From: Monocercomonoides exilis PA203
Lineage: Eukaryota; Protista; Preaxostyla
Assembly (NCBI GenBank): GCA_001643675.2
Contig: LSRY02000029.1
Location: forward strand, 1,116,001-1,180,000
Direction of reading: 5' to 3'
DNA length: 64,000 nt
Under the pieces are notes generated by a model that worked only from the letters and a program-made list of their open reading frames with translations, was not told the origin of the DNA and did no database searches. Shown in pieces: positions 929 to 53,024 of the stretch (positions are counted from its first letter, which is position 1; each line of letters opens with the position of its first letter). Made by a program: the position numbers and the translations under genes.

Positions 929-1131
929 AAATGTTATTTCTGTATTATTTAATTTTCATTTTTCTTCAAATCCAATTTCATTTCAAATGTAATTTTTATC
1001 TTAATAATAACCTAAATTAGTTTTTGATTATAATTCTTTTATTTGTCATTTTAGTTAATTATTTATTATTTCTCTTTCTTTCGAAATGAGTAATAAACTT
1101 GAAAAGATCAAAATGGCCACTATTTAGTTTC

Positions 1132-2223
1132 ATGGAAACATCAAAAATAATTTTTCCCAAGTTTCGGACAAGACCGCACAGTAATCCATTGAGCGATCAA
1201 GTATTTGATTACCCAATTTCGCCAGAATATGTTGATTGGGGAAAATTATTTGATAAACCAGAACAAGAAATGTGGTGCGATTTAGGATGTGGTTATGGTG
1301 GTTTGCTTGAAACTCTTGGACCAAGATTCCCTAAAATCAATATAATTGGTATGGAACTGCGGGGTCAGGTTGTGGATTATGTTGAAAATCGAATTTTGAA
1401 GTTGAGACGAGGCGAAATTCCTTTTGATAAAATGAATGTGAATCCAGTCCCAAAAGATTGCAGGGGACGTATTCAAGGTACAGAATTAATTGAAGAGCAA
1501 CTTGAAGTAGATGCTGAGGAAGAAAAAAATGACAACGAAGGGCAACAAGAAAAGGATGAAAAAGATAACAAATCTGCTGATGATAATCAAGATGTCAGCC
1601 CACTTTTTCTAAGTTGTCCAGAACTTGCAATAGCTAATCCTATGAAAGGAGTTGATGTTACCGATCTTTCTTTTGCTCGTGATTCTCCTCCTGTTGTTCC
1701 AATACCCGAAGAAGCATTGAAGGATTATAAATTTCTTAATATTGGAGTGATTCGAGCAAATTCAATGAAAAACATGTCAAATTACTTTAAGAAAGGAGGC
1801 CTTACAAGAATGTTTATATTATTTCCAGATCCTCATTGGAAACATCAGCATATACGGAGAAGAGTTGTAAGTCCATCTCTTCTTGATGAATATGGATATT
1901 GCTTAGCTAAAGGCGGAAGAGTTTACACCATCACAGATGTTCCAATTGTGTACCATTGGATGGTGTGGTGCTTTGAACGTCATCCACTGTTTAAGCGCAT
2001 CCCAGAAGAGGAATTGGTTTGATTGTTTTTAACATAAAGTGTTATATTTAAAGAATAATTATATTTTAATTTTTTTTCTCTCTCTCTCTAACTCTCTTTC
2101 TCTCAAACAACTTTTTAGGAAAAGGACGTCTGTTATACATTAATATTTTCATCAACAGCTGACGCTGGAAGAGCGGAACGAAAAGCGGACGGGAAATTCC
2201 CTGCTGTATTCGAAAGAATTTAA
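1132..2223 (+). CDS. TRM8: tRNA (guanine-N7)-methyltransferase catalytic subunit
   Basis: Motifs RPHSNP, DLGCGYGGLL, GMELR, LFPDPHWK, GRVYTITDV; one intron about 2018-2118; last exon ends AVFERI* (TAA 2221-2223). Confidence 0.95.
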
Positions 2224-2963
2224 TTCATTTCAATTTAAATATTTCACATCAAGAATTTATTTTCAAGTTGATCATTTTTTTTGTATAATTATTATATCCG
2301 GATTAATAAAAAATATGCAAATTTTTACGATATTTTATTAGAAAGAATAATGTTGATGGAGATGAAAAGTGAAATGATGATAGATAAGGGATGAATGATC
2401 ATTTTTAATGAGGTGAAAAAGGTACTGTTAGAAAATTAATGTTCAAAAAAGTGATTGCCTCAAACGGCATTCATGAGAAAAAGTATATATTGGTGACTTT
2501 TTATTTCCTTTATTACACTTCTTCATGATTATTGAAGTTGTCAATTCTCACATGTTGTTTTGTAAAAAGGATTGGTTGATTTTTCTTTCATTCCAGCTGA
2601 GCATATAATATGCTTTCCTCTGATAATCAGCAAACAATATCTGCTGAATCTGTGAAGAAAAAGTTGAAATTCGATCTAACTAATATACCACTAAGATCGA
2701 ATAAAGAATAAAAAAACGCAAAAACTTTGTAAAATGGTTAAATAAAAATGAAATCGTAATGGGAAATGCGTAACTTCGACATTGAAAGTCAAGTTACAAG
2801 CAAATCACAAATATTGCCTTTGAATGGTTTGCCATTTATTAAACAAAAATAAAAAAACTGTTAAAGAAAGTCTAAAACAGCTTAAAATAACAGCAATTTA
2901 AAAAAAAAAAACAAAGCAGATATTAACAAGTTTGTTTGAATCCTCATATGACAAGATTCCTAA

Positions 2964-4931
2964 CTAAGATTTGAGTGCTGCCAATGTCTCCTTCTTCAGA
3001 ATGAGCCAGCAGCGCGGGTGGTACAGCTTGCCCTGCAAGATCTTCTCTGACTTCTTCTTGCCAATCCGCATTTTGTCGCTTTTTCTCGTAATCTTCGCAT
3101 CCAACATCAGAGTTCCTTCATCGCTCTCGTCTTCGTCGTACTCGTCTTCTCCGTCCAGCAGGTATTCTTCCTCCTCTTCTCCATTGTCATCGTTGTCAAT
3201 CGACAATCGGGGCTTCCTTTTCGCATTGTCGCCTTCTTTCTCCTCCACTCCAAAAAACAGCACATCCTTTCTTTTCTCGTTCAAAAGCCGAAACTCCGCT
3301 ATAGACGTCACTCTTCTGTCAGCTGCCGCAACACAGTCAGCAAACACCCACGTTGCGTCTTCTTCGACCAGCTGCTGCTCAAACTGGTCGCCGCACACAG
3401 GACACGTCGTCTGCTGCGCATCGACTGGACACACAAACGGTCCCAGACGCGACAGCAGCGCATCTATTTCTGTGCCCCCTGCCAAAGAATCTGCACTCAG
3501 CCCTTTGTCTAAGCCTGCTCCATCAGCACCCATGTTCTCAATATCGTCAGACAAATCCACATCTTCTCCATCCAGCGGTGGGTAATAGTCTTCTTCTTCG
3601 GCATCCACCAAATTCTTCCGTGTTTTCTCTTTGCTTTCTTGGCCTTTTTCTTTGTCCCTGCCCATTCGGATCTTCAGCGAGGCTGCTATCTTTCTCCTCC
3701 TTTTCTTGACCCACTCTTCCTCTGGCTTCATCCACCCGCGGCAGAACTGGCCTGATTCCTGCCTCTCCTTCAGCAGCACATTCGCATCGAAGTGCCAGTC
3801 CATGTGGCATCGCAGCATCTCTTTCTTCTCAAAGCGCTTGCCACATGTTGAGCACTGGTGCTCTTTCCGTGCGTCATACAGCCAGCTGTACGAGCTGCGG
3901 GAGATGGGCTGTTTGAACACCTCAATGTCTGCGTAATTCGTGGGGAAGCAGATGCGAGGCGGTCCCGCTGGAACCATCTGCACAGATGAAGATCGAGATG
4001 ACGAACGTGAGTGAATTTGAAATGCCTGGTTTGAAGGTTGTGACGATGACATCATTGAGGAAGGAGACGAAATTGCAGGCGGCGACGGAGCTGGTGAAGG
4101 TTTTGAAGAAATAAATTGAGAAAGAAATGAGTTGAGCTGCTCCGACGCTGATGAGCTAGGAGATGGAGAACGAGATGCTCGATCTCTGTAACTTCGCTCA
4201 AATTTTTCTGGATATGGTGGTGGATATGATCTTTGTTTAGTGGATTGAAATGAAGTTCCTTGGTGAAATGACGACATGTTTGAAGGGTGTTGGTAATAAG
4301 GAGGAGATGGTTCTCTTTGAGCGGAATTTCCTTCTGAAAGAACAGAATATAAAATATTCAGCTCATCGGGAGTAAGAGATTGCAAAATTGTGCTATCAAT
4401 TTGCATGAGTGGATCTACACCTCCAGTAACAGGTTGTTGTGTACGAAAATTGGATGGATTGTGTGCTGGAGCTTGCCGAAACGCATCTACCAAATCATTT
4501 CTTGGAGTTGGTTGTATTTGTGGTTCAGGTTGTTGTGGTTTGAAAAGATGCTGAAGTTGTGCAAGGATTGACTGAGAAAATACGCCAGTCCACGTATTAT
4601 ATAACTTTTGTAAAGAATGTCTAATTTTCATATCTGAAGACATAAAAGCGTTTGTGAAACATTCAATAATATTCGTTTCAAAAAGTTCGATCCAAGGACT
4701 TCTTAAATTTTTCACGATGCTATCGAGCAAATACAATGCTGTAAGTTTATATTCTGGTTGGGCCCGTAAAATGCGTAATTGTATACATCGAGCAATTTGA
4801 GGTGCTAATTGAGAATTCTCTTGTGCAACCATTGTTAAAGCGTTAATAGCAGGCTTTGTTGGTTCTGTTAGTTCTTCCAAATTTGCACGATATTCAACAA
4901 CTATAGGGTCGGAGGATTCCCTTCCATTCAT
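2964..4931 (-). CDS. PCF11: Cleavage/polyadenylation and Pol II termination factor PCF11
   Basis: N-terminal CTD-interacting domain (KLTALYLLDSIVKN), C2H2 finger (CSTCGKRF...HMDWHF), RGW motif, C-terminal CPVC...YHPRC finger; first ATG at 4931. Confidence 0.93.
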   Translation of the reverse strand: MNGRESSDPIVVEYRANLEELTEPTKPAINALTMVAQENSQLAPQIARCIQLRILRAQPEYKLTALYLLDSIVKNLRSPWIELFETNIIECFTNAFMSSDMKIRHSLQKLYNTWTGVFSQSILAQLQHLFKPQQPEPQIQPTPRNDLVDAFRQAPAHNPSNFRTQQPVTGGVDPLMQIDSTILQSLTPDELNILYSVLSEGNSAQREPSPPYYQHPSNMSSFHQGTSFQSTKQRSYPPPYPEKFERSYRDRASRSPSPSSSASEQLNSFLSQFISSKPSPAPSPPAISSPSSMMSSSQPSNQAFQIHSRSSSRSSSVQMVPAGPPRICFPTNYADIEVFKQPISRSSYSWLYDARKEHQCSTCGKRFEKKEMLRCHMDWHFDANVLLKERQESGQFCRGWMKPEEEWVKKRRRKIAASLKIRMGRDKEKGQESKEKTRKNLVDAEEEDYYPPLDGEDVDLSDDIENMGADGAGLDKGLSADSLAGGTEIDALLSRLGPFVCPVDAQQTTCPVCGDQFEQQLVEEDATWVFADCVAAADRRVTSIAEFRLLNEKRKDVLFFGVEEKEGDNAKRKPRLSIDNDDNGEEEEEYLLDGEDEYDEDESDEGTLMLDAKITRKSDKMRIGKKKSEKILQGKLYHPRCWLILKKETLAALKS

Positions 4932-5029
4932 CTTCAACTTCAATTAAATTCCCATGATCAATACCACTATTCACTTTTTGATTGCTGTTTTCTTTTAATT
5001 GCCGTCAAAAATTGAACATATAAATTTTC
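4932..5029. promoter_or_regulatory. 98-bp bidirectional promoter interval PCF11/RPB3
   Basis: Divergent ATGs at 4931 and 5030; TGATCA at 4955-4960. Confidence 0.65.
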
Positions 5030-6293
5030 ATGTCACTTAAAATATCAATTATTGAACAGACAAAAAAAAGGCTCGTATTTTTGCTTTCAGGAGTCGACGT
5101 TAGCGTTGCAAATTCGTTAAGACGAATTATCCTTGCTGAAGTTCAAACGATGGCTATTGATTTGGTAGAATTCTATTCAAACACTTCAACATTACCAGAT
5201 GAATTTATAGCTTTGAGATTGGGGCTTATTCCTCTGACGAGCCCTGTGGATGATTCTGCATTTTTGACAAAAGAAGTTTATTCATTATTTTTTCTCGCAG
5301 ATTAAAGTGCAATATAATACATATAACCTAGGATTGTACATGTTCTGGAAATTGCCCAAGATGCACTGTAGAATTCACTCTTGATGTTAAAGCGACTGGT
5401 TTGAGGAATATTTTAATTTTCTTTTTATTTCATGACCTATTTTTCAAAGATTTGCCTGTGTCTGTATATTCAACTGATCTACAATCGGACGATGATAGAG
5501 TTACTGTAGCACAAGATGATCAATTTCCGAAAGGTATATTGCTTTGTAAATTAGCTGAACATCAAGAACTTGTTGTTCGAGCCTATGCTAAAAAGGTATG
5601 GTTAAAAATTAGAAAACTATGGAATTTAAATTTTATTTAAATTCTCTGTTTTAGGGATGTGGAAAAGTACATGCAAAATGGAATCCGACAAGTTGTTGTG
5701 TGTTTTCATATGAACCAGAGATAAAGTTGAATCCAGCAATGCTTGATGAATTGAGCGAATCAGAAAAACATGAATTGTTTGCGTTGAAATGTTTTCTAAC
5801 TTTCTTTTTGAAATTAAAAATTTTTCATTTTTCTTCTTTTTTAAAAAAAGCATCGCATCATGCCCTGCTGAAGTATATGACGAATCTGCTGGACTTGGTG
5901 CAGTTGTTATTTCAGATCATTGGAATTGCATGTATTGCAAGGAATGCGAAATTAAAGCAAAAGAGATGGGAAAAGAGGGAATGGTTTTAATAACTCACAG
6001 GACACCGAATGTCTTTCGTTTTACTGTTGAAGTATGAACTCGCTTTTATCAAAAAGCTTTTGCTGAATTTACTTTAATTTTCTTAATATTTCTTCATTCT
6101 ATTGAATTGTTCAAAATTAATAATTCGATTGATTTTTTCAATTTAATAGGGAACTGGAGCAATGGCTCCGGTGGATATTGTTCGAAAGGGCATTCAGGTT
6201 ATGAATGATAAATTAACTTATCTTTCCAGATGTGTTAATGAACTGGGGCAGATAGCACCAATTAGAGATGGAGATGAATTAGAATTTTTATGA
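5030..6293 (+). CDS. RPB3: RNA polymerase II subunit RPB3 (6 exons)
   Basis: ANSLRRIILAEVQTMAIDLV, DEFIALRLGLIPL, CTCSGNCPRC, GKVHAKWNP, FRFTVE/GTGAM; GT-AG introns restore frame; stop TGA 6291-6293. Confidence 0.93.
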
Positions 6294-6508
6294 AGCACTT
6301 TGCATTGGAATGCTAAAAAATCTATGGCAAAATATGTAAAGTGTTTTCGATTAATTTTTTATTTAGCATTTCACATTTTTATTTTTTTAATAGTATTTTA
6401 AAATATAAAGTGTAAAGATTGCTTTATAATTTGTGACAACAGTTTTTGTTTCCCCATAATATTTTATTTCAGATATTCTTTTTTTTCAAATTTCGCTAAA
6501 TTGTTGTT

Positions 6509-8183
6509 ATGCAGAAGCCTGATCCGTTGATTGTTGGAGCAGGATCCTGTTTATTAAAAGGGAATACGCAAGCTTTGAATCTTCTTTCATTTCTTCAGAA
6601 TGATCAGGAAAATGCAACAGTTTTAATTGTCAACGCTGGAGATTGTAGACATGTTTTGAAGACTATTCAAGGGTTAAAAATCAATAAAAAAATTAAATCG
6701 TTAAATATTTACGTTGTTGAAAGAAATCTCGAATCGCTTGTACGTCAGTTATGCCAGATTTTACTCGTTAATCATTTTGAATTACCAGTTGCGGAAAGAG
6801 CAGAAACTTTTCTTGACATCCAAGGTAATCTCCTCGTTAGCGAATATACATTCAATCAAGTTATTTCACTTGGAAAACAATTACGCAGCTTTTTGGAAGA
6901 GAAAACGAATCCGTTTCTTTGGAATATTGAAAGAAAAAGACTAAAATTTAAAGAAATTGATCAAATGATAGAAATTACTCGCGACTTTGAAAAAGATGAA
7001 GGTGTAAATGCTTCGGAAATGTTGGATACACGATTGAGGGAGTATTACAGAGAAAGATATGATCATCGAAGAAATCTTGTGGATTGGGACATTCACATGA
7101 AGTTACATGACTTAGGTGCAACAATAATTCATGATACAGAATTTCAGAGATGGAGAAACGAAGGTATTGCGTTTCCCATGAGAGAAGGAGGACACATAAA
7201 ACCTAATCTAACAATAATTACCACTTTGAAAGGAAGCGTCGTATGCATTTTTTTGACACAATATTTTTCATAAATAATTTCGTGAACAAATTTGTGTATT
7301 TCTTTGTGACTCTTTCTTGTTATTGTTATTATAGCGGGGAACAGCAGTGAATTCTCGAGGCTATTGGGGAGATATCGTAAATGGTCCATTTTTTGGGTAT
7401 GGGTTGGAATGTGAAGATCAAAAGTTGCTTTCAGTTAGAGATGGAAAGCACATTCATTCTTCTGGCCAAGTTTCGATGCAGCACATGAGAGAAATACTTG
7501 GTGACTTGGACAATTTGTTTGTGAATTATACACCCACAAAGGATGAAGAAGATGCTGGCAAAGATGGCTCAAAAAAAGAAGAAGAGAAGAAAGAGGATAA
7601 GAAAGAAAAGAAAGAAACGAAAGAAAAAGGTGAAGATGAAGACAACACAAGCAAAGAAAAAGAAGAAGAGAGAAAGGAAGAACAAGCAAAGCAGACGTCA
7701 TCAGCCAGCACTGAGCCAAAGTCAAACATAATGACTTTTGAGAGAAAGCCCGAAGCTTGTCAAGTGACAATTGTTCCAGTGAACAGCTTGTTCCCTCAGC
7801 CATTTGCAGAAAAGAAGTACTTCCAACGTCTCTTTGATGTGATTTGCATCGATTTCACTGGCGCAAAAGAGCTGGACTGCATTTCACAGCTTTGCAAGCG
7901 TGATGGCAATTGCGTTTCTGCTTCCTCATCTTCTTCTGCTTCTGCTTCCTCTTCTTCGACACCTTCTTCATCATTGTCATCGACTATCATAATAGAAACA
8001 CCGAAGTTTATGTTGGACTTGGCAAATGAAACAAAAGTTGCATTTGTGGAGAAGATCGTTTCTGATGGCAAAGCACAAGGATGGAAAGAGGAAAAAATGC
8101 CGAATATGATGAAAGATGAAAAAGGAAAGGAAAAACAAGTTGATCCATTGAAAATACCTTCAAAAATTGTGTTCCATGTTTAA
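6509..8183 (+). CDS. DNAAF3: Dynein axonemal assembly factor 3 (PF22)
   Basis: GDCRHVLKT, DTRLREYYRERYDHRRNLVDWD, FQRWRNEGIAF, RGYWGDIVNGPF; phase-0 intron 7241-7334. Confidence 0.9.
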
Positions 8184-8463
8184 ACGAAAGTTTCACAAGT
8201 AATTTCAACTCTATTTTTTGATTGTGTTTTTTATTCAAATTTTAAAAATTAATTAAAAATAAGATCTTTTTAAATGAAAAATAGGATCGTTTTTTTCAAA
8301 TTTTGTGTATGTGTTTATTTTTCAACGAAGTGATTGCAAATACTAATGTTGAACTTCAGAATACATTTGAATCGTATATCAGGACTTTAAATAAAGATCT
8401 GTAAAAAATCAATAACTATCTAAAAGAAAGAGAGAGAATAAGAATAAAAATAATTCATTGAGT

Positions 8464-12564: not shown

Positions 12565-13165
12565 AATGTTTAAAATGGTACGATCAATTTTTTTTCGTAA
12601 TTTTCAGCGTTTCGTTAAGGTTAAATATTTGATTATAACCTCAAAACAATAATTTTTGCGTGTCTGTGTAAAATTATTAGAATAATGAATCCGACTTTGA
12701 ATTTAAATGAACATATATTTTTTCATTTCCAAAAAACATTCGATATTCATTCAACAGTTTCAAAACAAGAAACTGTCGAAAGTATTGTACGACAGTATCA
12801 AATAAATTATTCTTCCATGACAAATGTTGTCTAATGATTAGTTCTTTATGATTACTGTTTGCAAAAGATTAAAAAAGCAAGAGAATAACTGAGAGGAGTT
12901 ATAAATTCTTATTATTAATTATTTCTTTTTTTTTTCTTTTCTTCATCTTCTTCTTCTTTTTTTTTTTTTTTTTTTTTGTTTTGTTTTAGTTTTTTGTTTT
13001 TAAAGTTTGCACTTTTGAATCAACTTCATTTTAGAAAATGAACTGAGAAATTGTTAAGAGAGGAATAGAAAAAAGTGCAAATAATAGATTGTGCATAAAG
13101 TACCGGACAAGATCGATTTCTCAACGACTTCAAGAAGAATAATTCTGATAATTTTCCTTTAAATA

Positions 13166-13619
13166 CAGTCTTAACCGGATATAATCACTTCGGTTTTTGC
13201 ACAACTTTTTAAAATTATATCCGATTGTAATTATACACGATGATGCTTTACACAGAAGAAAATAAAAATTTACAAATAAATAAATAAAATTTGTGTCATG
13301 TTTTGTATTTTTAATTATTCTTCATTAAAACGCATTTTTCAATAAAAAAAACTAAATTTTTAAATTTTATTATGTTATTTTGACTTATTCAAACATATTT
13401 CTGAAAAAAATAAAAAAATCGAAATTTATGATCAAAAAATCGATTTTTCAATGAAAAATCCACCTATAATGAAAAAAATTGTGATTATATATTTTTTGCC
13501 TTGTGATTATATGCGATGAAAAATGAATGAAAAACAAGCAAAAAAATGTCGGTGCATAGAAAAATGTGACAATAAACGAATGTGATTATATTCGTCGTGA
13601 TTATATCCGGTTTAGACTG
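13166..13619. mobile_element. Non-autonomous Tc1/mariner-pogo type MITE (454 bp)
   Basis: 23-bp TIRs CAGTCTTAACCGGATATAATCAC (13166-13188) and 13597-13619, 1 mismatch; TA on the left flank, TT on the right; internal GTGATTATA repeats near 13481, 13503 and 13582. Confidence 0.85.
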
Positions 13620-13621
13620 TT

Positions 13622-14350
13622 TATCTTTACACTACTAACTCTTTTGATACATGAGACTTTTAAAATAGCCTCATTTGTACTTTGAAAAAGTTATTTCTTA
13701 AATTTTGGCTAAACACAAAATCAAAATTCAAAAAGATTTTAATCATTAATTTTTTCTGAGCACAAATGAAGCAGTTTTGAAAGTCTCGTATATCACATGG
13801 GTGATAATTTTTGAAATCATAACTTTTTTCGGGATATTGAATTTTCAAAGGATGTTGTCGTTGAATAGAGATTTAATATTTTGATGATAAAAATCATCAA
13901 AACCATTTCAAATACAAATGTTAAAGCTGAAATCATGATGAAGATAACTTTAAATGGGGGAAAATATAGACTTTCAAGCTTTTTTTGCGCAAAGCACAAA
14001 CATTTTGTTTCACTCATAACATTATTAAACTTTCAGAGATTTCAAAATAAATTTGATTTTCGTATCCGTATATTAACGTAATTGATATAATAATATTGTG
14101 TTTTGTGATATCAAACGTTTTTCAAAATATGAACCAATTTTTTTTGAAAAATTTTGTTCACAAAAAGTTCATCTAAGATGCATAATTTTTCAATGAAAAT
14201 GCCTGAAGTCAAATATTTTGTCCCAAATAGTATTTTAACTTTTCACTATTCTTTTGTTTATATTCATGTGATATTTTCTAATCGAAATTAAAAAATGAAA
14301 TGATATGATTTAAAAAATAATCACCCACATGTATTAGTATTGTTAAAATA
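13622..14350. repeat. Older degenerate foldback element whose right arm is split by the 13799-14326 insertion
   Basis: Left arm 13622-13699 is about 75-80% identical to the reverse complement of 13741-13798 joined to 14331-14350. Confidence 0.7.
13799..14326. mobile_element. Non-autonomous TIR element with GGG..CCC termini and 4-bp TSD (ACAT)
   Basis: TIR GGGTGATAATTTTTGAAATCATA vs right end (2 mismatches in 23); ACAT at 13795-13798 and 14327-14330. Confidence 0.85.
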
Positions 14351-14355
14351 TATAT

Positions 14356-14378
14356 GGGTGATAATTTTTGAAAGCATA
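14356..14378 (+). repeat. Orphan copy of the GGGTGATAATTTTTGAAA terminus
   Basis: 22/23 identical to the TIR at 13799; no convincing partner end found (weak candidate near 14558-14578). Confidence 0.6.
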
Positions 14379-14851
14379 TTATGTCGATCTAATTTTTCTA
14401 TTCAAAAATTTCACTTGAATAATAACATATGAGTTTCAAAAAGTGAAATTGCTAAATAAAGAGATTTTCTTCTTTATTTCAACTGTAACATTAATTTTTA
14501 TAACATTTGTAAAATTTTAACAATTTGAACACAAAACATCTTCCCAATGACAAGCAACGTTTGAAAATTCTTCACCCCGAAAAAAATTATGATTTCAATA
14601 ATAACCTCCCACATTTTCAAATTTTTTGCAACAACTTTTTGAAGACTCAAATGAATTCTTTCTTCCTTAGATGAAATCTGTTTATTACGTGAAACAAATT
14701 CAATTTGAATCAACATGAGAACTGATATCATAATGTGTCTTTTTTAAATTAAAATAGTTTTTTTCTGTTCTCTATTCATCCTTTTTAAATAAATCGAAAA
14801 TGTCACAAAGAACTAATATTCTCATTAAGATGATTAGAAAAAAATAAACTT

Positions 14852-15104
14852 GGGTTATTCTTTTTGAAAAGTCGCAAATGTTTAATATCAAGGTTTTGTG
14901 AAAAAATACATTATTTGATCATTTTTTGCAATTTATTCATCAAACTTTATTATTTTGCAAATGAAAAAATTAAAGTTTATTTGATGAAAGAATATGTGCA
15001 TTGCATAGAAGTTTGATGAATACATTGTAAAAGATGATCAAATAAAGCACATTTTCAAAAAACCCAGATATTAAACATTTGCGACTTTTCAAAAAGAATA
15101 ACCC
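14852..15104. mobile_element. Foldback MITE (253 bp) with ~95-bp arms, GGG..CCC termini and 4-bp TSD (ACTT)
   Basis: Outer 38 bp form a perfect inverted repeat (GGGTTATTCTTTTTGAAAAGTCGCAAATGTTTAATATC), imperfect to about 95 bp; ACTT at 14848-14851 and 15105-15108. Confidence 0.9.
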
Positions 15105-15406
15105 ACTTTGTAAAAATATCTTTTGATGTTGAATTTTGGATAAATATTTAAAAAAGAAAAAAGTCAAAAATTGATCAAAACTCTGTTTTTGTGAAAAGAT
15201 CATAATGTATTAATTACGAAAATTTTTTCCAACGTCATATGCCTAACAACAATGATTTGAAGAAAAAATAAAAACATTTATTCAAAGAATTGAGATGAAA
15301 AAGAGAAAAAAAATATTTAACAAATTTTATATAAAATGCAATGATTATTATAATTTTTTTAAATGAATTTATTATCATAAAATTATTTTGAATAAAATTG
15401 GAATTG

Positions 15407-16661: not shown

Positions 16662-16720
16662 TTTAATAATGAAAGAAAAATGTACTTGTTGATCTATCCT
16701 CTTATTAAAACTTGCTCAAA
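16662..16720. promoter_or_regulatory. 59-bp bidirectional promoter/UTR interval with a central GATC
   Basis: Divergent ATGs at 16661 (-) and 16721 (+); GATC at 16691-16694. Confidence 0.65.
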
Positions 16721-17446
16721 ATGAAGAACTGGATTTTGAAAGAGAATGGAGGATCAATTGTAGAATTTTCAAGTCAATAGTTTGATTATTTAGTAAATAT
16801 CAATATTTCAATAATGAAAACATTATTTTGGAATAATTAACTAAATAAAATTTGTTTTTTTTATTATTTGCTATGTTTGATAATTAAACAAAAATAGCCA
16901 TCACGAATCGCGATGTTTAAATTTACTCACAAGGGATCCTACGCTTTGTTGGTTTTCTGGGCGTTCTCCTGCAGGTATGCATTTTGCATTTTTTTATTCT
17001 TTGAATATTTTATATCTTAATTTAGTTCCGCAACATGTCATATTTTCATTCAGTACCAAAGTTGATTTGAAAAGAGTGGGAATATATTTACATGGAGAAA
17101 GCAATCAAAACCCGAAATGTTTGCGTCATTAAATTTGAAATTAAAAATATCTTTTTTCACAAAAATTTTTTCAAGATCTTATCATACAAACTTCATTAGA
17201 CGGAAAGAATTTTACTACAGTTGCTGAATCAGAGTTAGAGCAACGTGCTGGAGATCATTTGTTTGATTTACCAGAATTAGTTACAGCCAGCTTCATAAAA
17301 TTCATAATAGTTTGATTTATTTTGAAATTTCATCTAAAAATATCATTAACTCTTTGTTTCAGACTGAAAACTTTGGGGGCTCAGGAATATTTGTAACGAA
17401 AGCACTTGCATTTGGAGAAGAGAGCATGGATCACACCAGAAGTTAA
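16721..17446 (+). CDS. Small discoidin/galactose-binding-fold protein, IFT25/HSPB11-like (5 exons; absent from ORF track)
   Basis: Four GT-AG introns give MKNWILKENGGSIVEFSSQYHHESRCLNLLTRDPTLCWFSGRSPAVPQHVIFSFSTKVDLKRVGIYLHGESNQNPKYLIIQTSLDGKNFTTVAESELEQRAGDHLFDLPELVTASFIKFIITENFGGSGIFVTKALAFGEESMDHTRS*. Confidence 0.8.
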
Positions 17447-18519: not shown

Positions 18520-18729
18520 GTTTCAACGTTGTAATATATGGGTGAGATCTGAGGCTTTTGTTTATCCCGGATGGTGTTTTCGTTAATAATTTTATTCAAT
18601 GCAACTCAGAGACTTGAATAAAGAAAGATTCTTTTTTCAAAAATAATAAAGTTTTAAAAATGATCGAAAATTGAGTCGGAATGGCAATTTACAAAAAAGG
18701 TCGAAACATTTACAACCTTTCAATATAAC

Positions 18730-19150: not shown

Positions 19151-20583
19151 ATGGCCCTTGAAGAATCTAACCTCTCTTTTTTATTTACTCCAAAATATAA
19201 AGAAAATACTGTGACAGTAGGATCAATGGATATTCATTATGTTGCAAGTGAAGCATCAAGTACTGATTTTGATGAAACAGGCCAAATTCTGTGGAGAGTG
19301 TCAAAAGTTTGACTTCATAACACTTTTAGTGTGTTCGTGTGAAAAACATTTAAAAACATTGAAATAATGCAATTTAGTTATTTGTTCTATTTTTGCAAAA
19401 AAACCCGCAATTAGTTAGAAACAGAAATATTCTAGAACTTGGAAGCGGGACAAGTATGCTTTTTCAATGAAAAACAGTTTTTAAAATAAACTTCAATTAT
19501 ACGTTGATGCACATGCAACAGCTGCTTTTGGTGGAATTGCTTCTCTTCAATTAGGGGCAAAAGCTGCAATATGCACAGACTACCAACCTCATATCGTTGA
19601 CATTTGCAAACAATCACTTCTTCTTAACAAATTTCATGGTTTGATAAACAATTCTTTGCAAGTAGGATTATTAAGTGACACTTTAGGAAAAGGATCTTCA
19701 TATTGTCATAAATGGGGAGACAAAGAATCATTAATGGAGATTTTGAGAGAAGAAATAGATCATGAAAAAATTCAGTTAGTTGTTGGCTGTGATGTTTGGT
19801 ATGAACAGTTGAACATTTATATGAAAGGACGTCATGAAAAAAAATTTTTTTGTCAATCTTCTGTTTAATCAAGTGTATGGGAAGATTCTCTTCCAGGACT
19901 ATTTTCAACAGCTGTGGAAGCTTTGTCATATAACACATCAGCAGCAGAAGAAAGAAAATCACATTCTTTGAAACAAACGCATCCACAATTGGTTCATTCA
20001 AGTGGCATTCTCCATCCATCTTTGTATCAGCATCCATTAATCATCTTTGCATTTGAACGAAGAGCTCTTCGCCCAGAAAAAAAAGCTTGCTTCACTTTGC
20101 TTTCTATTTTATTTATCACATCTTCGATATTTTGCCTTTCTATTCTATTCTATTATGTTCTGTTCTCTTCTGTTTATTATTATAGATGGAGGCCATTGCT
20201 GGATCTTATGGACTTGAAAGGTTGAGGGTTTGGAGCAATATATTCATATTTATTCTTTTTTTTTTTCCTTAATCATTATTTTTTGTTTCCTTTCTGTTCA
20301 TTCAAATTTTTGAATGAAAACAAAATGGAATCATCAGATATCAGCTCCTGAATTCGTTGAACCAGAAATTTTAGGTGATAAAATATTTTATGTCTTCAAT
20401 TTACTTTTTATTCTAAATTTTTACATTAATATTCCATTTTCTATTCATTCCATGAAATTAGAACAATATCCGTTAGCAGAGTTCTTCATCGACATTTATT
20501 ATTTGCCATCGGCTGAGCCAATTTCCACAGACGAGCCGAATGAAGCAGCAGAAAGCTCGACGTCTTCCTCTCATGAAAGCTGA
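19151..20583 (+). CDS. Seven-beta-strand protein methyltransferase (METTL21/Methyltransf_16 family), multi-exon
   Basis: TDFDETGQILW, NILELGSGT, ICTDY, HKWG, VVGCDVW; the 3' exon structure is less certain. Confidence 0.8.
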
Positions 20584-30878: not shown

Positions 30879-31052
30879 TGACAGCTGAAAGTGATTGTTC
30901 TTTTAATTATGCTGTAGCTATTTATTGGCTCTTCCAAAATACGTCGTTATAACGATTTTCACGAGTTATGAACTAATTTTTAGATCATAATTACTATAAT
31001 TATCATTTGAGAGCTGATCGAATTGATCGTGCCATAGTTATCGCTTTGAACA

Positions 31053-34829: not shown

Positions 34830-34872
<43 letters not shown>

Positions 34873-41288: not shown

Positions 41289-43864
41289 CCATGGGTGCTT
41301 TACCCGCCCCCTGGTGCCAAATCCGCACCCACAAATTGAATTAAAAGTTCACATTTTGTTATATGAACACTATTCATTTTCAATCATTGAGCTTTGAAAA
41401 AAATAGGACAAGTACATCACATTATTGAAAAGCTTCATTGTTTGGTGTTTGAGATAAAAAGGTTTCGAAGTTTTTTTTAAAAATTCTTCAACTTAATCAG
41501 TTTGCGGTAATACAAGAACAAAAAAAACCAAATGGGGTACTCACTCGTTCTTCTTTATCAATAATCACTTTCAGCAGATGCAAACCTTTCAATGTGAAAA
41601 AACAAACAAACAAACTACGATGACAACGAAGAATAATACTTTTCGCGACATTCAATTTCTTTTCTGCTGAAAGATGGTGAAACTGCTCTTTGAATTGGCT
41701 TCTCCTTTTCCGGTTTTCTTCTTTCATCAATGTTGCTTTCTCCACTTGTATCATCGTTCATAATATAATATATTATCTTTTTCTTTTTCTTTTTATGTTT
41801 TATTTCTCTTTTATCTTCATCTGCAGAAGAGCTTGACAAAAGAATGTTGAATTCTTCACGAGAATGCTTGGTTTTTGATGTTGAAGGAGTCGAAGAAGTT
41901 TTCGCTTTTTCTATTTTTTTATATTTGGATCGAAGAAATGCAAGATGCTTTTCTGCATATTCAAGTTGTTTTTTCAATTCGAAGCTGTCCAAATCTTCTA
42001 TAATTGTTGTTGAATTTAATTTGTGATCATCAGACGGAGAAGAACAGATCGATTCGTTCGGCGAAGTTGATTTTGTTGAGTTTGCTTTTTCTGAGGAATA
42101 AATATCTGATGGTATTGATGAAGCTGAAACACTTTGCCTTTTTGGTGGAGAATAGCTTCCAAAAAGTTCTTCACGCCAATCTTGAAACGAAGAATGAAAA
42201 TCTTCTTTCGATGGAGAGGCTCCAATAGGTGCTCCAGATACGCGAGAGAGAACGGGAGCTGCAGCAACAGGCCAGACTCCTGTCTTAATGAATGCTGCCT
42301 TCACTGTTGATGGAACACAAGCTGCAGCCAAGGCTTCGGGGAGAATTTCTGCAAGTTGGGCTCGATAAGAAGGGAGAGAAAATGGAGAAGGAATAACAAA
42401 TTTGTTACTCAAAGTGGATTTTAGTCGAGAAAAAACACATGAGTCACACGGCTGAAGCAAATGTGTCATATTAGGTGGGAATTTTTTCAGAATGATGAAA
42501 TTTTTTTCAGCTGCTTCAATTACAGTTTCGTCATTGTGAGTTGAATGATTATCCATTAACAAAAGTGCACGATGAGAACTTGTAGGTTTCACTTTCTCCG
42601 CGATTAATGGAATCCAGTAATTAATCATAATGTACTTGAAGATATCCTTAGTGATCCACCCGGAAGATGAAAAAATATATCTGATATCAAATGAAGAAAG
42701 TGTGCGAAACTCTTTCGGGAGTGTTTTCTTTGGCCATAGAAGAAATCGCGGTAATGAGGATCCGTCAGCGCAGATACAAAGGCATATAGTTGCATTCGGG
42801 ACTTTTGGAACGACGGGAACTTGTGGAGGAGTTTGACTTTTTAGGCAAACAACCAGTTTGTTCGATGATTCCCCACATGAGATAGACGATTCATCAAAAT
42901 TGAATATATCCGCAGCTGTGATATTGTATTCCGTAACAGTGCTTAACAATTCTGAAAACCATCCTCTGATATTTTCTGGTGACTGCGCTGATATTTTTGC
43001 AACGTCCGTGTGCCTTGCGATTGCAGCCTTCAAAACATCACTTCGTTGAATTAATTTGAATGCATATTTTTTGTTGATTGTTTGGAATTCTTTCTTTGGT
43101 TTTGATGATTTTTCTATTTGATCCACACACTTAGCAACATGAAAATGTTACAAAAACAAATTAATAAATAATGCAAACCATGTTTTGCACATCGCGAATT
43201 CGAACTATTGTCTGATTTGATAAAAGGACTAGCACCTGGTTCTCAATTTCTTCCAATTGCTCGTTCGTAATTGCCTGAGGGTGCCCATTCCTTCCAGCTT
43301 CTCTGCCAGCTCTTTCCGCTCTTATACCTCTTTTCCATGCATCTTTTGACACAACCTTTGCTTTTATGGCAGTTGAATATTTCACTTTAAAACTTTTTCG
43401 AATTGCGAAAAGCTTTTTCGATGGGGATTTGAATGATCGATATTCCTTGGTTGCAAGAACTCTGTGCAACTGAGTTGATGATAATTCAGGTTTTTCAGTC
43501 ATCTTTATTGGGTGTGATCAAGCATATCAAAATTTCTTTTGTTGTCATTTTGAATCAAAGATAACGTTAACAAATTTCGTTGTCTGACATACAAAGCGAA
43601 TAATATTGAACTGGTTTATTATTTTCACTAGCTCTGAAAAAGTTGCGATAAATATAGTCTTTGGATTAAAGAAGAAACTGGCTTTATTTTGAAAGAACAA
43701 AAATTAACGTAGATTGAGCAAAAGCAAAACTTGGATTGTTGACATCATTTTTAGCTGTTTTAAAATAGTTTTCAATAGTTAAACATCTAATTGTGTTTTG
43801 AAAGCTCATTCAAATATGAATAGGGTGCGGGTTTGGCACCAGGGGGCGGGTAAAGCACCCATGG
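41289..43864 (-). mobile_element. Full-length pogo/Fot1-type DNA transposon (2576 bp)
   Basis: 42-bp TIRs (41289-41330; 43823-43864) with 1 mismatch, TA duplication at 41287-41288 and 43865-43866, internal transposase gene. Confidence 0.97.
41615..43502 (-). CDS. DDE_1 (pogo/CENP-B family) transposase, 612 aa, DD35D
   Basis: Exons 43502-43179 and 43129-41615 joined across a 49-nt GT-AG intron; motifs FNFDESS, SSSGWI, LLLMDNHSTH, THLLQPCD with 35 residues between the last two Asp. Confidence 0.93.
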
Positions 43865-44309
43865 TAATTATAGATATCGAATTATCAATTAAAAGTTAAA
43901 ACAATCTCGATTTTTCGCATTTTTCGGAAAAAAATTTCTTATGAATACTCTGTGTGTGTGTGTAAGCCTGGTACTATGCATTTTATCTTTAAAAATAATT
44001 ATTATTTAATGAGATGCCCGAACGAAAAAAAAAATGTTCTGATAAAAAAAATACTCGGATAGAAGAATTCCACCCAACTCAAAGAATTACTCATTTTCCA
44101 AGTTTAATTCTTAAAAAAAGTTGTCTTAGGTTGTTGGCAAACAAACACTTAATTATTTAGATCTGTTCGCTCATGGCAACCAACATTACGTAATATTCGA
44201 AGGAAATGAAATATTTATCTTGAATTCTGAAACGAAGAATAGATATTTATTTTTGATTATTTCACTTTTTTTTTTTTTTAAAAGGTTATAACAAACAAAA
44301 TTATCTTTT

Positions 44310-47300: not shown

Positions 47301-47835
47301 GTGCATTCCCTGCTGATAGCCTGTTTCTGGATTCTTTAAACTCCAAACAAGTAAAATACGACGAAGACAATCATGAACTTCAGGTCGCGTAAAAAAAGGA
47401 ATATCGGTGAAAAGTCTATTTAAATCCTTTTTAATATTAGTCTCAACGTCTTGGTTTTTAAAGTACTTATTCCACGAAGAAACAGATGAATCACTCAAAG
47501 GATTTGAAATTTCTAAATCCTCAGTTTCTGCCTCATGCGGATCAATAAGAAATCCATCAATTAATTCTTGATATTGCCTACGCCATTCACGACTTTGCAT
47601 TTTCCAATCAGGTCCTGGCCTTCCAGAAAAGCATCCAAGAAAAAATTTCCAACACAATGAACGTATTGGTGACTTTTCAAGACCGTATTTTATAGCATAA
47701 ATGCGTGCTTTTATGGAAAATTCTTCTCCCGCTGATCCAAGCAAAACACAAAATTCATTTCTAAATTATTAAAAAATTTAAAATTTCAACAATTACTTGT
47801 TAATTTTTTAAAAAGCCTTTTTCATACAAATCCAT
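44310..47835 (-). CDS. TBC1D5: Rab GTPase-activating protein, TBC1D5-like
   Basis: RSLCWKFFLG, NPLS..SSWNKYF, IKKDLNRLF (Arg finger), YQQGMHEI (Gln finger), MRWLRMLFAREF; short first exon with start at 47835 (alternative 47853). Confidence 0.88.
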
Positions 47836-48854
47836 TTGTATTCCATGGATCATTTCACTTTGGCATGCCTCGAATAACTGTATGGAAAGCTAAAAAAATA
47901 CAAAAAATTTCTTTATCATCCCTTATTTATATAATTTGTGATCTATTGAAGTATTGTTTGATAAATTATTTTGTAAATTCTCTATTATTTATTTATTTGT
48001 TTGTTCTAACTTCTGAAAACATATATACAAGCATAAAAAATTTCGATATTATTAAAATATTCGACAGAGAGAGTAAAAACGCATTAGAAAGGGTATTTTT
48101 TTTAGAAATAAATATATTTGATTGATTTCAATATTTTTGATTCATTTTTTTCATTTCCGAAAGCCATTTCAATGTAATGACTCTTCTTTAAAACAATTTC
48201 TCTCTTCTCAATTTCAATTGCATTTCCAACTTTTTGAAACTGTTACATTGAAATTTTCTGAACAAATGATTTACTTAAATCAAAGAATAAAACTAGTTTT
48301 GCTAATTGAAAAAGGATCAATGTTTATATATGTTTTTTGGCATATTGTTGAAAGGAGTTTCTTTTCAAGCATTCTGAGCCTTTCGGCCGAATGATGAAAA
48401 CTTAAATTGTAAATAATTCTTGAAAAGAATGACCTTTTAACGAAAAGAAAATATCTCTTCAATTATAAGCCACAATCTGAGGAATAATTTTATTCAAGTA
48501 CTTCGTAAGGTTGAAGGAATTTCAAAAAATTTCACATTTTGGATAATTTGTGATATTTGTTTTTCATTGAAGTTCTGGGAGAACTGAAGTATCAAGAAGC
48601 TTGTGGAAAATAAGTGGAACATACATGTTGAAGTTGAACGAATTTGATGAATAGTATTTGCTGAAAAGAAGGAAGATGAAACGTACAGTGTAGCAAAATT
48701 GAAGGGAAAGATGAGTACAAAAATTCCTCACAGCAAGTTTCTTAAAAGGAAACTATAATAAAATAATCTTCTTCACAACAAATAAGAGAGATATGGAAAA
48801 TTACAGAAGTGGATATCTGATGAATTGGTTTTTGTAAGTGTGTGAATATTGTCT

Positions 48855-50335
48855 CTACTCGTTTGATCGTTGCTCCCGTTTTCTGCCGGAATCCCTTCCT
48901 CGACTGCTGCTGCGACTGTCGAGCCTCAAGTCGCGCCTGCTGTTTTGATCGTCGGAGCGAGAGCGGCTCCCGCTGCGGCTACGACTTCGACTGTTGCTCG
49001 ACGGACTGCTGCTTGCGCTGCGGTGGCGACGATGTCTGCTTCCACTCCGATGTCTTCCATGTCGATGGGAATGATGATGATGGCGGCGATGACGGCTGGG
49101 GCTATCGCGATCACGTCGCATGCTACCCATCGCAGACGAAGCTCCAGACCCTGCTCCCATCACCATATGCCCAGCCATCCCATGAAGTTGAGATGGATCA
49201 ACATACTTGATCGTAAACTGCTGCTGCCCTCCAGGCCCGCTAACAGGTACAGCAAGCGGTATTCCCAACCCGCTGCTTTGCAACGAAAGAGCAGGAGTTG
49301 TGATCATCCCGTCTGCAAGACCACCGGAAAGCGGAGTAGCAGATTGGAGAAGAGGTGCATGGGATGTGGAATAAGATGATTGTGATGATGAGGGATATGA
49401 ATCACGTGAAATTGCACCCCTGTCTCTGTCAGATCTGTATGATCCTCTATCTCTTCTGTAATCATCTCTATCGCGATCTCTGTCCCGATCTCTATCTCTG
49501 TCTCTATCGCGGTCACGATCTCTTCCCCATTCACGATCCCGCCCCCTGTCTCTGTAGCCATCACGTGGACGCATCCCTGATCTTGTTGGAGAAGTTGAAA
49601 ATTCGACAGTAAGTCGATTTCCTTCGAGCAATGTCTCGTGCATTTCCTTCTGTGCTTTGATTGCGTCATCCAAGTTTCGGAATTGTATTTTGCAGAAGCT
49701 GTTTATCATTTCAAAGTTTATTATTTCTCCAAAAACTTCAAACGCTCTACGGATAGTTGATTGAGATGTATGAACAACGTCAAATCCTACAACAAATAAA
49801 GTGTCACGAGGTACGCTTAGTGCAACCTTTGCTCGCTCACTTTCTCTCCTGAAATAAATGAATTGAAAAATTTTATTCGTAAATGACAAAATAATTATTT
49901 CGAACCTTCTAATTTGCTGATGAGATTTTGAAATTTCCACGTTTACGGGCTTCGTACCGGGACCTATTACGGTTTGTGATAATGCTGAAATTGCACCATC
50001 AACGTCTCCTAGAAGATCAACAAAAGCATATCCATGTTTTAATTCTTTAAGAAAAAATGAAATAAACATAAATTTCCATTCGAATTACTCATGAACCAAT
50101 TAAATATATTTAAGTGATGCATGCCAACTCTTTTTACAGAACCAAAACGAGAAAAAGCATCTTCTAAGTGGTTTTTATAAATTGCAGGTTCAACGCCTCC
50201 AACAAAAAGTGTTACAGGTGTCTCTTCTTTTTTTTCTTCTTCTTCATCTAATGTTGGTTTGTCTTTTGCAGGAGAAGTCCATTCAGCTTGCTCTGGAGAA
50301 GATCTGTCAACACTGTTACTTCTTGATCGAGACAT
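48855..50335 (-). CDS. SR-like splicing factor: two RRMs, (RD)n and RS tracts
   Basis: LFVGGVE..HGYAFVD RRM1, LFVVGFD..FCKIQF RRM2, DRDRDR run, C-terminal SRSRSRSGSRSRS; two introns. Confidence 0.85.
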
Positions 50336-50489
50336 AAATTCACGATTTATACTTAAATGATCATACAATTAAATAAAAAAATTTATTTTTGAGCTAGTTT
50401 TCAACTATTAAGCAGAAAGATATTCACTATTTGAAATAAGTTTATTTTAATAAAACTTTAATCGATAATAACTACTGCAAAAAGCGGTA

Positions 50490-52876
50490 ATGGAAGGTGA
50501 AAGGGTATTGAATTTGCTTAAATTTTTGTTCATATTTAAATGTGTTTTGGTGCAAATGAGTGAAGATTCAAAAGCGTATGATTAATTTTTAGTTTTCTTG
50601 TGATTGCATTTGTGAATCCTTAATTTTATAATCTGTAGTTGGAGATATACCAATATTTAAGTTTAACTCAAAGAGGAGCGGATTCGAAGAAACTTTGTCA
50701 AAGCTACATTTTGCAATTTTTAATTCACACAAAGATACAAAAGAGAATATCGCAGAACTATCTGATTGGAGGTTCATTTTTGAATCTGAAGTTGTTTGTT
50801 CTTTCTTTTTTTTGATAATCATTTCTATAAGAATTAAAATGTTTTATATGCTCACCAACATTCATTAGGATGCACATAAAAGATTCGAATCATTAACGAA
50901 CAGCGATTTAAGATTATGCCTCAAATTCTTGGGTCAATCAACATTTGGTTCAAAAGTTTGCCACTGATTTCAAATAATATTTCTTAAAACACAATATCAG
51001 TAGGATTTATTAATTATGAAACTTTTATCATTTTTTGAAGAATGTGCAAAAAACCCAAAAGAAATACCGTTACAATCAAGAACACTGAATTCGTATTCTC
51101 AGACTTTTGAATTGACAAAACGAAATGAAGAGATGCCAAAAAAATCGCAAAACAATGAATTTAATTTGCCATTAAGTCGCTTAAATAAAGCAGGAAAAAG
51201 CAATTCTCAAAAGAAAGTAGATAAAATAAGAAAAGGAAAAATGTTATTGCAACATGCCAATAGTATTCAAATGAAAGATGTTATCACAGAAAAGATTGAA
51301 AAGCAGAGTAAAGTATTTTCATTTGATTCATCTGATGAGCTTGGCTCTGTGAGTTTTGGCTTTTGTTGCAGTGAAAGCGACAACGAAGACAACGAGCTAT
51401 TTGATAATAAGATCGAAGAGAAAGTTTCTGAAGGACAAAAATCAAACTTTGGTGTGAAAAGGAAACAAAAGCTTTTGGAAAGTGATCAGAACTCGGACAA
51501 ATCTTCAATTGAAATTTCTCCTCCCTCAAAAGTGTTAGGCGATGATTTTGAAAATCCAAAAATGGAAACAAACATACTGAATGATTCTTCAGAAATAACA
51601 GAAAGGATTGAACCAGAAACAGTTGTGCGGCATCAAAGGCGACAATGCCATCCTTTGGACACAACACCCACGCTGTGGCCGCTACCATTTCATCTGTTTC
51701 GACGCGAACTGAGTGACAAACTTCCATCGACGAAGGAACAAAAGGTATTGACGATATTAATCATATGGCAATGTTTCATATTTATTTTATCATTTGCTTA
51801 AAATACCTTCAAATTTCATCATTAAAAATTCAATTTTCTTCTTTTTTTGATAACTTTTTAATTTTTCTTTCTATTTATCTTTCTTTCTTTTTGAAAGGGC
51901 ATAAACACTTTGACAACAACAGCTGGCGAGAAGTGGAGGAAACTGTCAGAAGATGAAAAAGGAGTGTATTACATTCGAGCGAGAGAGCGTGTGGAGAAGA
52001 ATGGCGGAAGATGTCTTGATAAATCGAGCAAACTGAAAGAAGAAGCAATGTCATCTGCATCGCCACGTGCCTCTTCCAGGTCTTCGATGAGATCGAGATT
52101 CAAAAGAAAAGAGCAGCCAGAGCTGAGCTTTGTGAAGAAGCTGACAAGACCAAGCAGAACGAAAACGGCAGCAACGCATCAATCTCGCGAGCTTGTGCAC
52201 AACTACGGCACACGAAAGAATTCGACAGCGAGGCTTGGCGAAGGGAAGAAGACAGCACTGCCACTTCTTGAAAGCGGGAGAAGCAGCAATACAACAAAAG
52301 CTGAAGAGAAAGAAGAAGAAGATGACGATGATGATGATTTCGACTTGTCTTTTCTGACTGATTCGTCGGACGAAAGCAACGAAGCGGATGAAGACAGCCA
52401 TTTTGTTGAGGTTCTTGGCTCGAAGCCGAAATGCGTGTCGTCTCCATCGCAGCTCCCGTTGCAGGCTGCAGTTCCACTCTTTTCGCAGCCGTCTCCTTCT
52501 GTGATAATCGAAGACACAGACACATTGCAAAATATTCTTCGGCCTTCTGATGATGCAATCATGTATCAGTTGCAACTTATATTACAAAATGTATGAAATC
52601 TGAACTTTTAATAAATCTGCTTTTGGTTTTGCTTTTGCTTTGTTTACTATCTTGTTTGTTTATATTCAAAAATTATTTATTGTTTACAATACTTTTTTAT
52701 ATGATCAGTGCAAGGATGGCTGCAATGTATCGCTGCTAGAGTTGAGAAAGAAATTGGAGCATACGTTTTCATTTTCTTTTAAGAGTTACTCAAGTTTGAT
52801 AAAGCAATTAATTATTAAAGTTACTGATTCAATGGAATTGACTGAAAGTGCATATGGACAGTTTTGTGTTACATAG
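50490..52876 (+). CDS. DEK-like chromatin protein with SAP domain, internal HMG box and DEK-C domain
   Basis: Spliced 5' exons give KLGDIPIF..LSKLHFAIF..KENI (DEK N-terminal) and FESLTNSDLRLCLKFLGQSTFGSKDLLIMKLLSF (SAP); HMG box PFHLFRREL..AGEKWRKLSEDEKGVY; DEK-C PSDDAIMYQLQLIL..LRKKLEHTF. Exact first exons uncertain. Confidence 0.75.
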
Positions 52877-53024
52877 TGTTGAACTTTTAATGTTTTATTA
52901 TGCATAAGGAATTTTTTTTCACATATTATTTTTGATATTTTTTTGCAAAAAATGAAAAAATCCAAAAATAGAAAACAAAAATTTTATTTGGTTGCGATCA
53001 GTTTTTTTTTTTTCTTCTTCAAGC

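What the first reader, a model, noticed from the sequence alone, without database searches (positions are those of the whole stretch)
1106..52999. Position-restricted GATC motif 12-29 nt upstream of start codons: candidate core-promoter/initiator element
Seen: GATC precedes 11 of 20 modelled starts at a tight distance (gap to ATG): TRM8 1106 (22), PCF11 4956 (24), ValRS 12582 (17), RBM18-like and IFT25-like sharing 16691 (29 and 26), V-ATPase E 18546 (26), RPL39 31025 (24), transposase 43516 (13), TBC1D5 47848 (12, if the start is 47835), SR-like 50359 (23), F-box-TM 52996 (25). Five more genes have one at about 60-110 nt; DNAAF3, the methyltransferase, NPHP4 and the DEK-like gene lack a nearby copy. 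By my rough estimate, an 18-nt window of such AT-rich DNA would contain GATC by chance only a few percent of the time. Known: metamonads such as Trichomonas use short Inr-type elements close to the ATG, and GATC is an N6-adenine methylation context. Inference: a palindromic, orientation-independent TSS element, factor site or 6mA mark that the transposon also carries.
Basis: partly seen in the sequence, partly recalled or inferred. Interest (0 to 1): 0.8.

Follow-up and report, generated by a model that had tools for sequence, protein, structure and literature searches.

The report
Oxymonad GATC bidirectional promoter element
In mitochondrion-lacking gut protists (oxymonads), the palindrome GATC sits just in front of roughly a quarter to a half of genes and is shared by head-to-head gene pairs, so it is probably an undescribed two-way promoter signal, although no transcription start has been mapped to it yet.

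Summary
The window is from Monocercomonoides exilis. All listed GATC sites exist: 11 of the 17 starts I could place have GATC 12-29 nt upstream (1.0 expected), or 10/16 without the doubtful TBC1D5 start. Bulk GATC is not enriched. The motif replicates, but the tight spacing does not. In 200 kb of held-out M. exilis DNA, 7/27 starts have it within 40 nt (2.9 expected, p=0.02) and only 3/27 at 12-29. In Blattamonas nauphoetae (NCBI gene calls), 19/36 have it within 40 nt (7.3 expected), at gaps from 1 to about 75 nt. All 11 head-to-head spacers carry it, some only 30-44 bp long; 0/5 short tail-to-tail spacers do. Flanks favour G at -5 and T at -2 in both genera. Best reading: an orientation-independent, protein-bound core-promoter element at or near the start site, serving both genes of divergent pairs. 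No TSS, binding or methylation data were obtainable. It is not the Trichomonas Inr or M5, nor the published M. exilis TATA-like motif, and I found no paper describing it. The scan noted the same motif in other windows of this genome.

The parts
1106..1109 (.). GATC 22 nt before TRM8 ATG (1132,+); an out-of-frame ATG follows 3 nt after the motif
   Evidence: start fixed by orthologue alignment; orthologues in three other oxymonads have GATC at gaps 8, 10, 15
4956..4959 (.). GATC in the divergent spacer shared by PCF11 (ATG 4931,-; gap 24) and an RPB3-like gene (ATG 5030,+; gap 70)
   Evidence: (CID domain from residue 16)
12582..12585 (.). GATC 17 nt before ValRS ATG (12564,-)
   Evidence: (database protein P0121 is identical, 1366 aa, same start)
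16691..16694 (.). single GATC in a 59-bp divergent spacer: RBM18-like ATG 16661(-), gap 29; IFT25-like ATG 16721(+), gap 26
   Evidence: (IFT25-like splice joints)
18546..18549 (.). GATC 26 nt before V-ATPase E ATG (18519,-)
31016..31028 (.). two GATC 33 and 24 nt before the RPL39 ATG (31053,+; first exon is the ATG alone); a third GATC at 30983 lies 104 nt before the divergent RRM gene ATG (30878,-)
43516..43519 (.). GATC 13 nt before the first ATG (43502,-) of a DDE_1 (pogo/Tigger-type) transposase gene
47848..47851 (.). GATC at the TBC1D5 start: gap 12 if the start is 47835(-), but overlapping the annotated upstream in-frame ATG; doubtful member
50359..50362 (.). GATC 23 nt before SR-like/RRM gene ATG (50335,-)
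52996..52999 (.). GATC 25 nt before a modelled ATG (53025,+); start not verified by homology

Best explanation
GATC is the palindromic core of a short DNA element (half-site preference G-n-n-T-Y-GATC on either strand) that marks RNA polymerase II promoters in oxymonads. SHOWN: positional enrichment just upstream of start codons in two genera, presence in every head-to-head spacer examined in Blattamonas, near absence from gene 3' ends, and a conserved flank bias. INFERRED: a sequence-specific, probably dyad-reading protein binds it and recruits or positions the pre-initiation complex irrespective of orientation, so one site serves both genes of a divergent pair. Transcription would start at or within a few bases of the motif. 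The motif-to-ATG gap (1-75 nt) would then be roughly the 5' leader length, which explains why the gap is not fixed. I put this initiator-like placement at about even odds against a nearby but looser placement. It covers about a quarter to a half of genes, most visibly conserved genes in dense regions.
For: Window 11/17 versus 1.0 expected. Held-out M. exilis, partly motif-masked start calling: 7/27 within 40 nt, rank 1 of 136 4-mers (permutation p=0.02). Masked start correction turned 3 misses into hits, including a 69-bp divergent pair sharing one GATC. Blattamonas: 19/36 within 40 nt versus 7.3 and 26/36 within 75 nt versus 12.3; density peaks in the last 25 nt before the ATG at 18.8/kb versus about 5/kb. 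11/11 divergent spacers carry GATC, including spacers of 30, 36, 44, 44, 55, 74, 97 and 110 bp, versus 0/5 tail-to-tail spacers of 160 bp or less; 14/20 versus 1/20 spacer ends. TRM8 orthologues of four oxymonads all have it. G at -5: 0.41 vs 0.21 and 0.45 vs 0.22, p=2e-3 in each genus; T at -2 likewise. Genome-wide, GNNTYGATC lies just upstream of WAAAATG 472 times, versus 325 at 151-180 nt and 290 for the C-at-minus-5 control. Gaps of 1-10 nt rule out TATA-like spacing. In Blattamonas there is 1 ATG in 525 nt between motif and start versus 28 in 1334 nt 5' of the motif, as expected of leader sequence. The published mean 5' UTR is 62 nt with a broad range (PMC8767320).
Against: No TSS was mapped: RNA contigs stop short of 5' ends. 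Plain GATC near AAAATG shows little genome-wide excess (10760 versus 10213 and 10670), although that proxy is swamped by non-starts and GATC-bearing repeats. 16/27 held-out M. exilis starts have no GATC within 75 nt, and these starts are my own models. In M. exilis 7 ATGs lie between motif and start (9.5/kb versus 15/kb), so depletion there is weak. No candidate reader was identified (no GATA, IBD or MT-A70 hits, no positive control). Blattamonas data come from only two contigs, and shared sites are not independent.
Confidence: 0.68

Rival explanations
1. GATC is the site of a general regulatory (nucleosome-excluding or activator) factor that defines an open promoter region, while the TSS is chosen by separate A/T-rich or YR sequence at variable distance.
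For: Wide gap range (1-75 nt). Tandem copies 12-14 nt apart in several Blattamonas promoters. Out-of-frame ATGs 12-19 nt after the motif in a few genes would be harmless if the TSS lay further 3'. The dyad flanks fit a dimeric transcription factor.
Against: Gaps of 1-4 nt leave almost no room for a downstream TSS. Spacers of 30-44 bp leave little else to act as core promoter. This rival differs from the best reading only in TSS placement.
Confidence: 0.17
2. GATC is kept at promoters as a target of N6-adenine methylation (Dam-like or AMT1-like) that marks or regulates them.
For: GATC is the Dam target and contains ApT (established knowledge). 6mA tracks transcription in many protists, including Trichomonas (PMC12695648). 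An unchecked scan note reports a Dam-like gene in a mobile element of this genome (s1-465230).
Against: No MT-A70 candidate in the genome (uncontrolled, introns could hide it). In AMT1 species 6mA is described as a periodic pattern on transcribed genes (PMC12695648), not as one site before the ATG. A Dam enzyme needs no G at -5 and would hit all genomic GATC, which is neither enriched nor depleted. Not exclusive of protein binding.
Confidence: 0.07
3. GAUC acts in the mRNA leader (translation or stability element) rather than in DNA.
For: It is close to the ATG, and a palindrome reads the same in both transcripts.
Against: One site shared by two divergent genes would need overlapping 5' ends. 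The flank bias is two-fold symmetric, typical of duplex DNA recognition. Out-of-frame ATGs follow the motif directly in TRM8 and PCF11.
Confidence: 0.05
4. Chance, start-codon cherry-picking or transposon-derived copies.
For: Held-out M. exilis is weak at 12-29 nt. High-copy repeats carry GATC.
Against: Independent replication on NCBI-called Blattamonas genes (p<=2e-4), the divergent-versus-convergent contrast, conservation at orthologous TRM8 promoters, and no shared repeat sequence around the promoter sites.
Confidence: 0.03

Closest known systems
Trichomonas vaginalis Inr (HCAHW, bound by IBP39) and M5 (CCTTT)
   Same: Short motif within about 20-30 nt of the ATG in a metamonad, dictating the TSS of genes with short leaders (PMC7370421).
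   Different: Different sequence. Inr and M5 are directional and cover about 90% of genes; this element is palindromic, shared by divergent genes and covers about 25-55%. HCAHW and CCTTT are not significantly enriched here, and no IBD-domain hit was found.
[quoted passage not shown]
   Same: Same organism, proposed promoter motif in about 52% of promoters with predicted UTR.
   Different: Different sequence, not enriched over shuffles in my start sets (10/44 versus 8.4; 5/32 versus 2.5), and with no consistent offset to GATC. That paper and PMC8767320 never mention GATC.
Microsporidian CCC/GGG-like motif (Encephalitozoon cuniculi, PMC2803860)
   Same: Lineage-wide 3-4 nt signal immediately before start codons in a compact genome with very short leaders, usable to correct start-codon annotation.
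   Different: Unrelated lineage and sequence, not palindromic, and at a much tighter distance.
GATC-binding GATA zinc fingers (yeast Gat3/Gat4/Ecm23-type, plant GATA) and Dam/6mA GATC sites
   Same: Same 4-bp core (from memory; my literature search did not confirm the GATA-factor motif).
   Different: No GATA zinc finger detected in this genome (uncontrolled); methylation untested.

Membership tests
Core-promoter element (general) | Positional enrichment at gene 5' ends, not 3' ends | tested here: met
   peak in the last 25-50 nt before the ATG; 14/20 divergent versus 1/20 convergent spacer ends
Core-promoter element (general) | Fixed position relative to mapped TSS | not testable with these tools
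   only assembled RNA contigs were available and they stop short of 5' ends
Core-promoter element (general) | Needed for transcription / bound by a factor | not testable with these tools
   needs reporter, EMSA or footprinting
Core-promoter element (general) | Conserved at orthologous promoters | tested here: met
   TRM8 in four oxymonads, gaps 22, 10, 8, 15; the Blattamonas TBC1D5 orthologue lacks it within 75 nt
Trichomonas Inr / M5 | Consensus HCAHW within 30 nt or CCTTT within 20 nt of the ATG | tested here: not met
   HCAHW 26/44 vs 22.1 (p=0.12) and 21/32 vs 16.6 (p=0.06); CCTTT 2/44 and 0/32
Trichomonas Inr / M5 | IBP39-type initiator-binding domain (PF10416) encoded | tested here: inconclusive
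   no hit, but no positive control and introns are ignored
TATA-like element | A/T-rich consensus about 25-30 nt upstream of the TSS, directional | tested here: not met
   the motif is a GATC palindrome; gaps of 1-10 nt to the ATG are incompatible with that spacing
AMT1-type 6mA promoter mark | MT-A70 family AMT1 gene in the genome | tested here: inconclusive
   zero candidates, no positive control
AMT1-type 6mA promoter mark | Methylated ApT at these sites | not testable with these tools
   needs raw Nanopore or SMRT signal
GATA-factor site | GATA zinc finger (PF00320) encoded | tested here: inconclusive
   5 candidates scored, none significant; no positive control

The most novel reading that the evidence does not exclude
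Oxymonads use a palindromic, intrinsically bidirectional initiator: one GATC-centred dyad, read by an unidentified factor (no GATA or IBP39-type reader detected), launches transcription on both strands from within 30-45 bp and stands in for TATA/Inr at a large share of housekeeping genes.
Probability: 0.3. Interest if true: 0.8.

Novelty: new variant of a known kind. Interest (0 to 1): 0.62.

Why it matters
In the papers I could search, the only promoter motif proposed for an oxymonad is a TATA-like one that does not beat shuffles in my start sets. A conserved, testable element gives a handle on how transcription starts in eukaryotes that lack mitochondria and adds a further metamonad solution beside the Trichomonas Inr/M5. 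It explains how divergent genes only 30-44 bp apart can both be expressed. It also offers a practical signal for correcting start codons and designing expression constructs for these organisms.

Tried and rejected
Genome-wide counts of plain GATC before AAAATG at three distances, and of TGATC before AAAATGTC (217 near versus 346 far), were uninformative: non-start ATGs and a high-copy GATC-bearing repeat dominate. A self-trained gene finder misplaced many starts because first exons are often 3-30 nt, so starts were refined by hand with GATC and decoy 4-mers masked; the first batch of starts was fixed from ORF lists before looking upstream. RNA contigs gave introns but no 5' ends. The metagenome scan for TRM8 returned only distant matches; ten such loci showed no GATC in the 160 nt before the match, a loose negative control. 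The ValRS homologue search listed no named oxymonad. Paratrimastix: 2/4 starts with GATC within 45 nt, inconclusive. Anaeramoeba: 0/3 within 40 nt, too few. The Trichomonas Inr/M5 and the published TATA-like motif were rejected as the identity. Spliced gene models were not searched as joined proteins.

Full report
Source. The genome has 82,301,135 bases in 101 contigs and an 18S rRNA gene of about 3 kb. This matches the Monocercomonoides exilis ONT assembly (PMC8767320), and the window's TBC protein is named as M. exilis in the database. The window is a gene-dense stretch of conserved genes.

Observation. All ten GATC positions are as stated. The window holds 220 GATC against 219 expected, so there is no bulk excess. 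I could place 17 starts. Well supported are TRM8 (orthologue alignment), ValRS (identical database protein), PCF11 (CID domain from residue 16), and RPL39, V-ATPase E and IFT25-like (recognisable N-termini; splice joints for the last two). Eleven of the 17 have GATC 12-29 nt upstream versus 1.0 expected, the best of 136 4-mer classes. TBC1D5 is doubtful because the public protein begins at an in-frame ATG overlapping the GATC (homologues undecided). Without it the count is 10/16 versus 0.99. Motif and distance were chosen after seeing this window, so held-out tests were needed.

Held-out M. exilis. I fetched 200 kb next to the window. Starts were listed from ORFs and uncertain ones were re-called with GATC and decoy 4-mers masked. 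That correction turned three misses into hits, including a 69-bp divergent spacer with one central GATC (gaps 36 and 29). Result: 7/27 within 40 nt (2.9 expected, p=0.02), 11/27 within 75 nt (5.1 expected, p=0.01) and only 3/27 at 12-29 (p=0.15). GATC again ranked first among 4-mers at 3-40 and 3-50 nt. The effect is therefore real but weaker and broader than in the window. This region is richer in expanded families and transposons, and some of my starts may be wrong.

Genome-wide proxies. GATC before AAAATG counts 10760 at gap 12-30, 10213 at 42-60 and 10670 at 102-120. This is nearly flat, but the proxy is mostly non-starts and repeats. With the extended half-site, GNNTYGATC occurs 472 times within 30 nt of WAAAATG, against 325 at 151-180 nt and 290 for the same pattern with C in place of G. 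By eye about a sixth of the listed near hits are one repeat family and no far control was run for C, so this is supporting rather than decisive evidence.

Second genus. Blattamonas nauphoetae loci with NCBI gene calls (two contigs, 36 starts) are an independent test. 19/36 have GATC within 40 nt (7.3 expected) and 26/36 within 75 nt (12.3 expected), p<=2e-4, rank 1 among 4-mers. Density rises to 18.8/kb in the last 25 nt before the ATG from a background near 5/kb and falls back inside the gene. All 11 head-to-head spacers contain GATC. Eight of them are only 30-110 bp long and hold one or two copies between the two ATGs. The five tail-to-tail spacers of 160 bp or less hold none. Gaps run from 1 to 73 nt. 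TRM8 orthologues from two gut-metagenome contigs, presumably oxymonad (64-68% identical), have GATC at gaps 8 and 15. Paratrimastix (2/4) and Anaeramoeba (0/3) samples are too small to date the origin.

Shape of the element. Among unique promoter sites, read from either strand into the core, G at -5 is about doubled (0.41 vs 0.21 in M. exilis; 0.45 vs 0.22 in Blattamonas; p=2e-3 each) and T at -2 is raised (0.50 vs 0.32; 0.53 vs 0.27). These were found among 32 position-base tests but recur in both genera. The bias appears on both sides of the core relative to gene direction, suggesting a loose dyad of about 14 bp. That is what a dimeric DNA-binding protein would read (inference).

Mechanism. 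Shown: location, sharing by divergent genes, conservation and flank bias. Inferred: an orientation-independent protein-binding element that positions Pol II initiation. Gaps of 1-10 nt exclude TATA-like spacing. In Blattamonas the sequence between motif and start is nearly free of ATG (1 in 525 nt versus 28 in 1334 nt upstream; part of this is an annotation effect), as expected of a 5' leader. In M. exilis the depletion is weak. Out-of-frame ATGs 0-3 nt after the motif in TRM8, PCF11 and TBC1D5 would be too close to a cap at the motif to be used, or would be excluded by a TSS slightly further 3'; both fit. The reported 5' UTRs (mean 62 nt, broad; PMC8767320) are compatible with gap roughly equal to leader length. 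RNA contigs confirmed introns but did not reach 5' ends, so the TSS is unmapped. No GATA, MT-A70 or IBP39-type domain was found in the genome, but these searches had no positive control and ignore introns.

Comparison with what is known. It works like the short ATG-proximal signals of Trichomonas (Inr HCAHW, M5 CCTTT; PMC7370421) and microsporidia (CCC-like; PMC2803860), but it fails the Trichomonas consensus tests and differs in being palindromic and shared. The M. exilis genome papers report only (A/G)TATTT(T/C/G) and an A/T-rich Kozak region and do not mention GATC (the supplement of PMC6759080 was not held). That TATA-like motif is not enriched in my sets. Further literature searches found no description, within the limits of an open-access library. 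Other first-stage notes of this scan report the same motif in other windows of this genome. These are unchecked AI notes and are not counted as evidence.

Verdict. A real, conserved, apparently undescribed promoter-proximal element of oxymonads. Class: new variant of a known kind; interest 0.62.

Noticed in passing
Divergent from V-ATPase E.
   Followed up: partly
window ~13420-15200: Non-coding A/T-rich element containing a high-copy repeat that begins with TGATC. About half of the listed hits belong to it, often as inverted pairs 0.3-5 kb apart, suggesting MITE or transposon terminal repeats. It inflates genome-wide GATC counts.
   Followed up: partly
window 20085-20185: GC..AG intron in the methyltransferase gene, supported by RNA contigs.
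   Followed up: no
window 31053, 47835, 30878; L004:5064 and L021:1013: Many first exons are 3-8 nt (ATG directly followed by a donor site), which misleads ORF-based start calls.
   Followed up: partly
window 50491 (+): A possible earlier first exon for the DEK-like gene, which would make it divergent from the SR-like gene with the GATC at 50359 about 128 nt away; unverified.
   Followed up: no
window 41615-43502 (-): Pogo/Tigger-type DDE_1 transposase split over two frames (intron or frameshift near 43130-43180); further transposase genes in held-out DNA at L019:792-1337 and L007:3811-5439.
   Followed up: no
L023, L054 (Blattamonas): Extremely compact gene spacing: divergent ATGs only 30, 36 and 44 bp apart.
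   Followed up: yes
L001/L002: The 18S rRNA gene spans about 3.0 kb, with at least 10 copies on 8 contigs.
   Followed up: no
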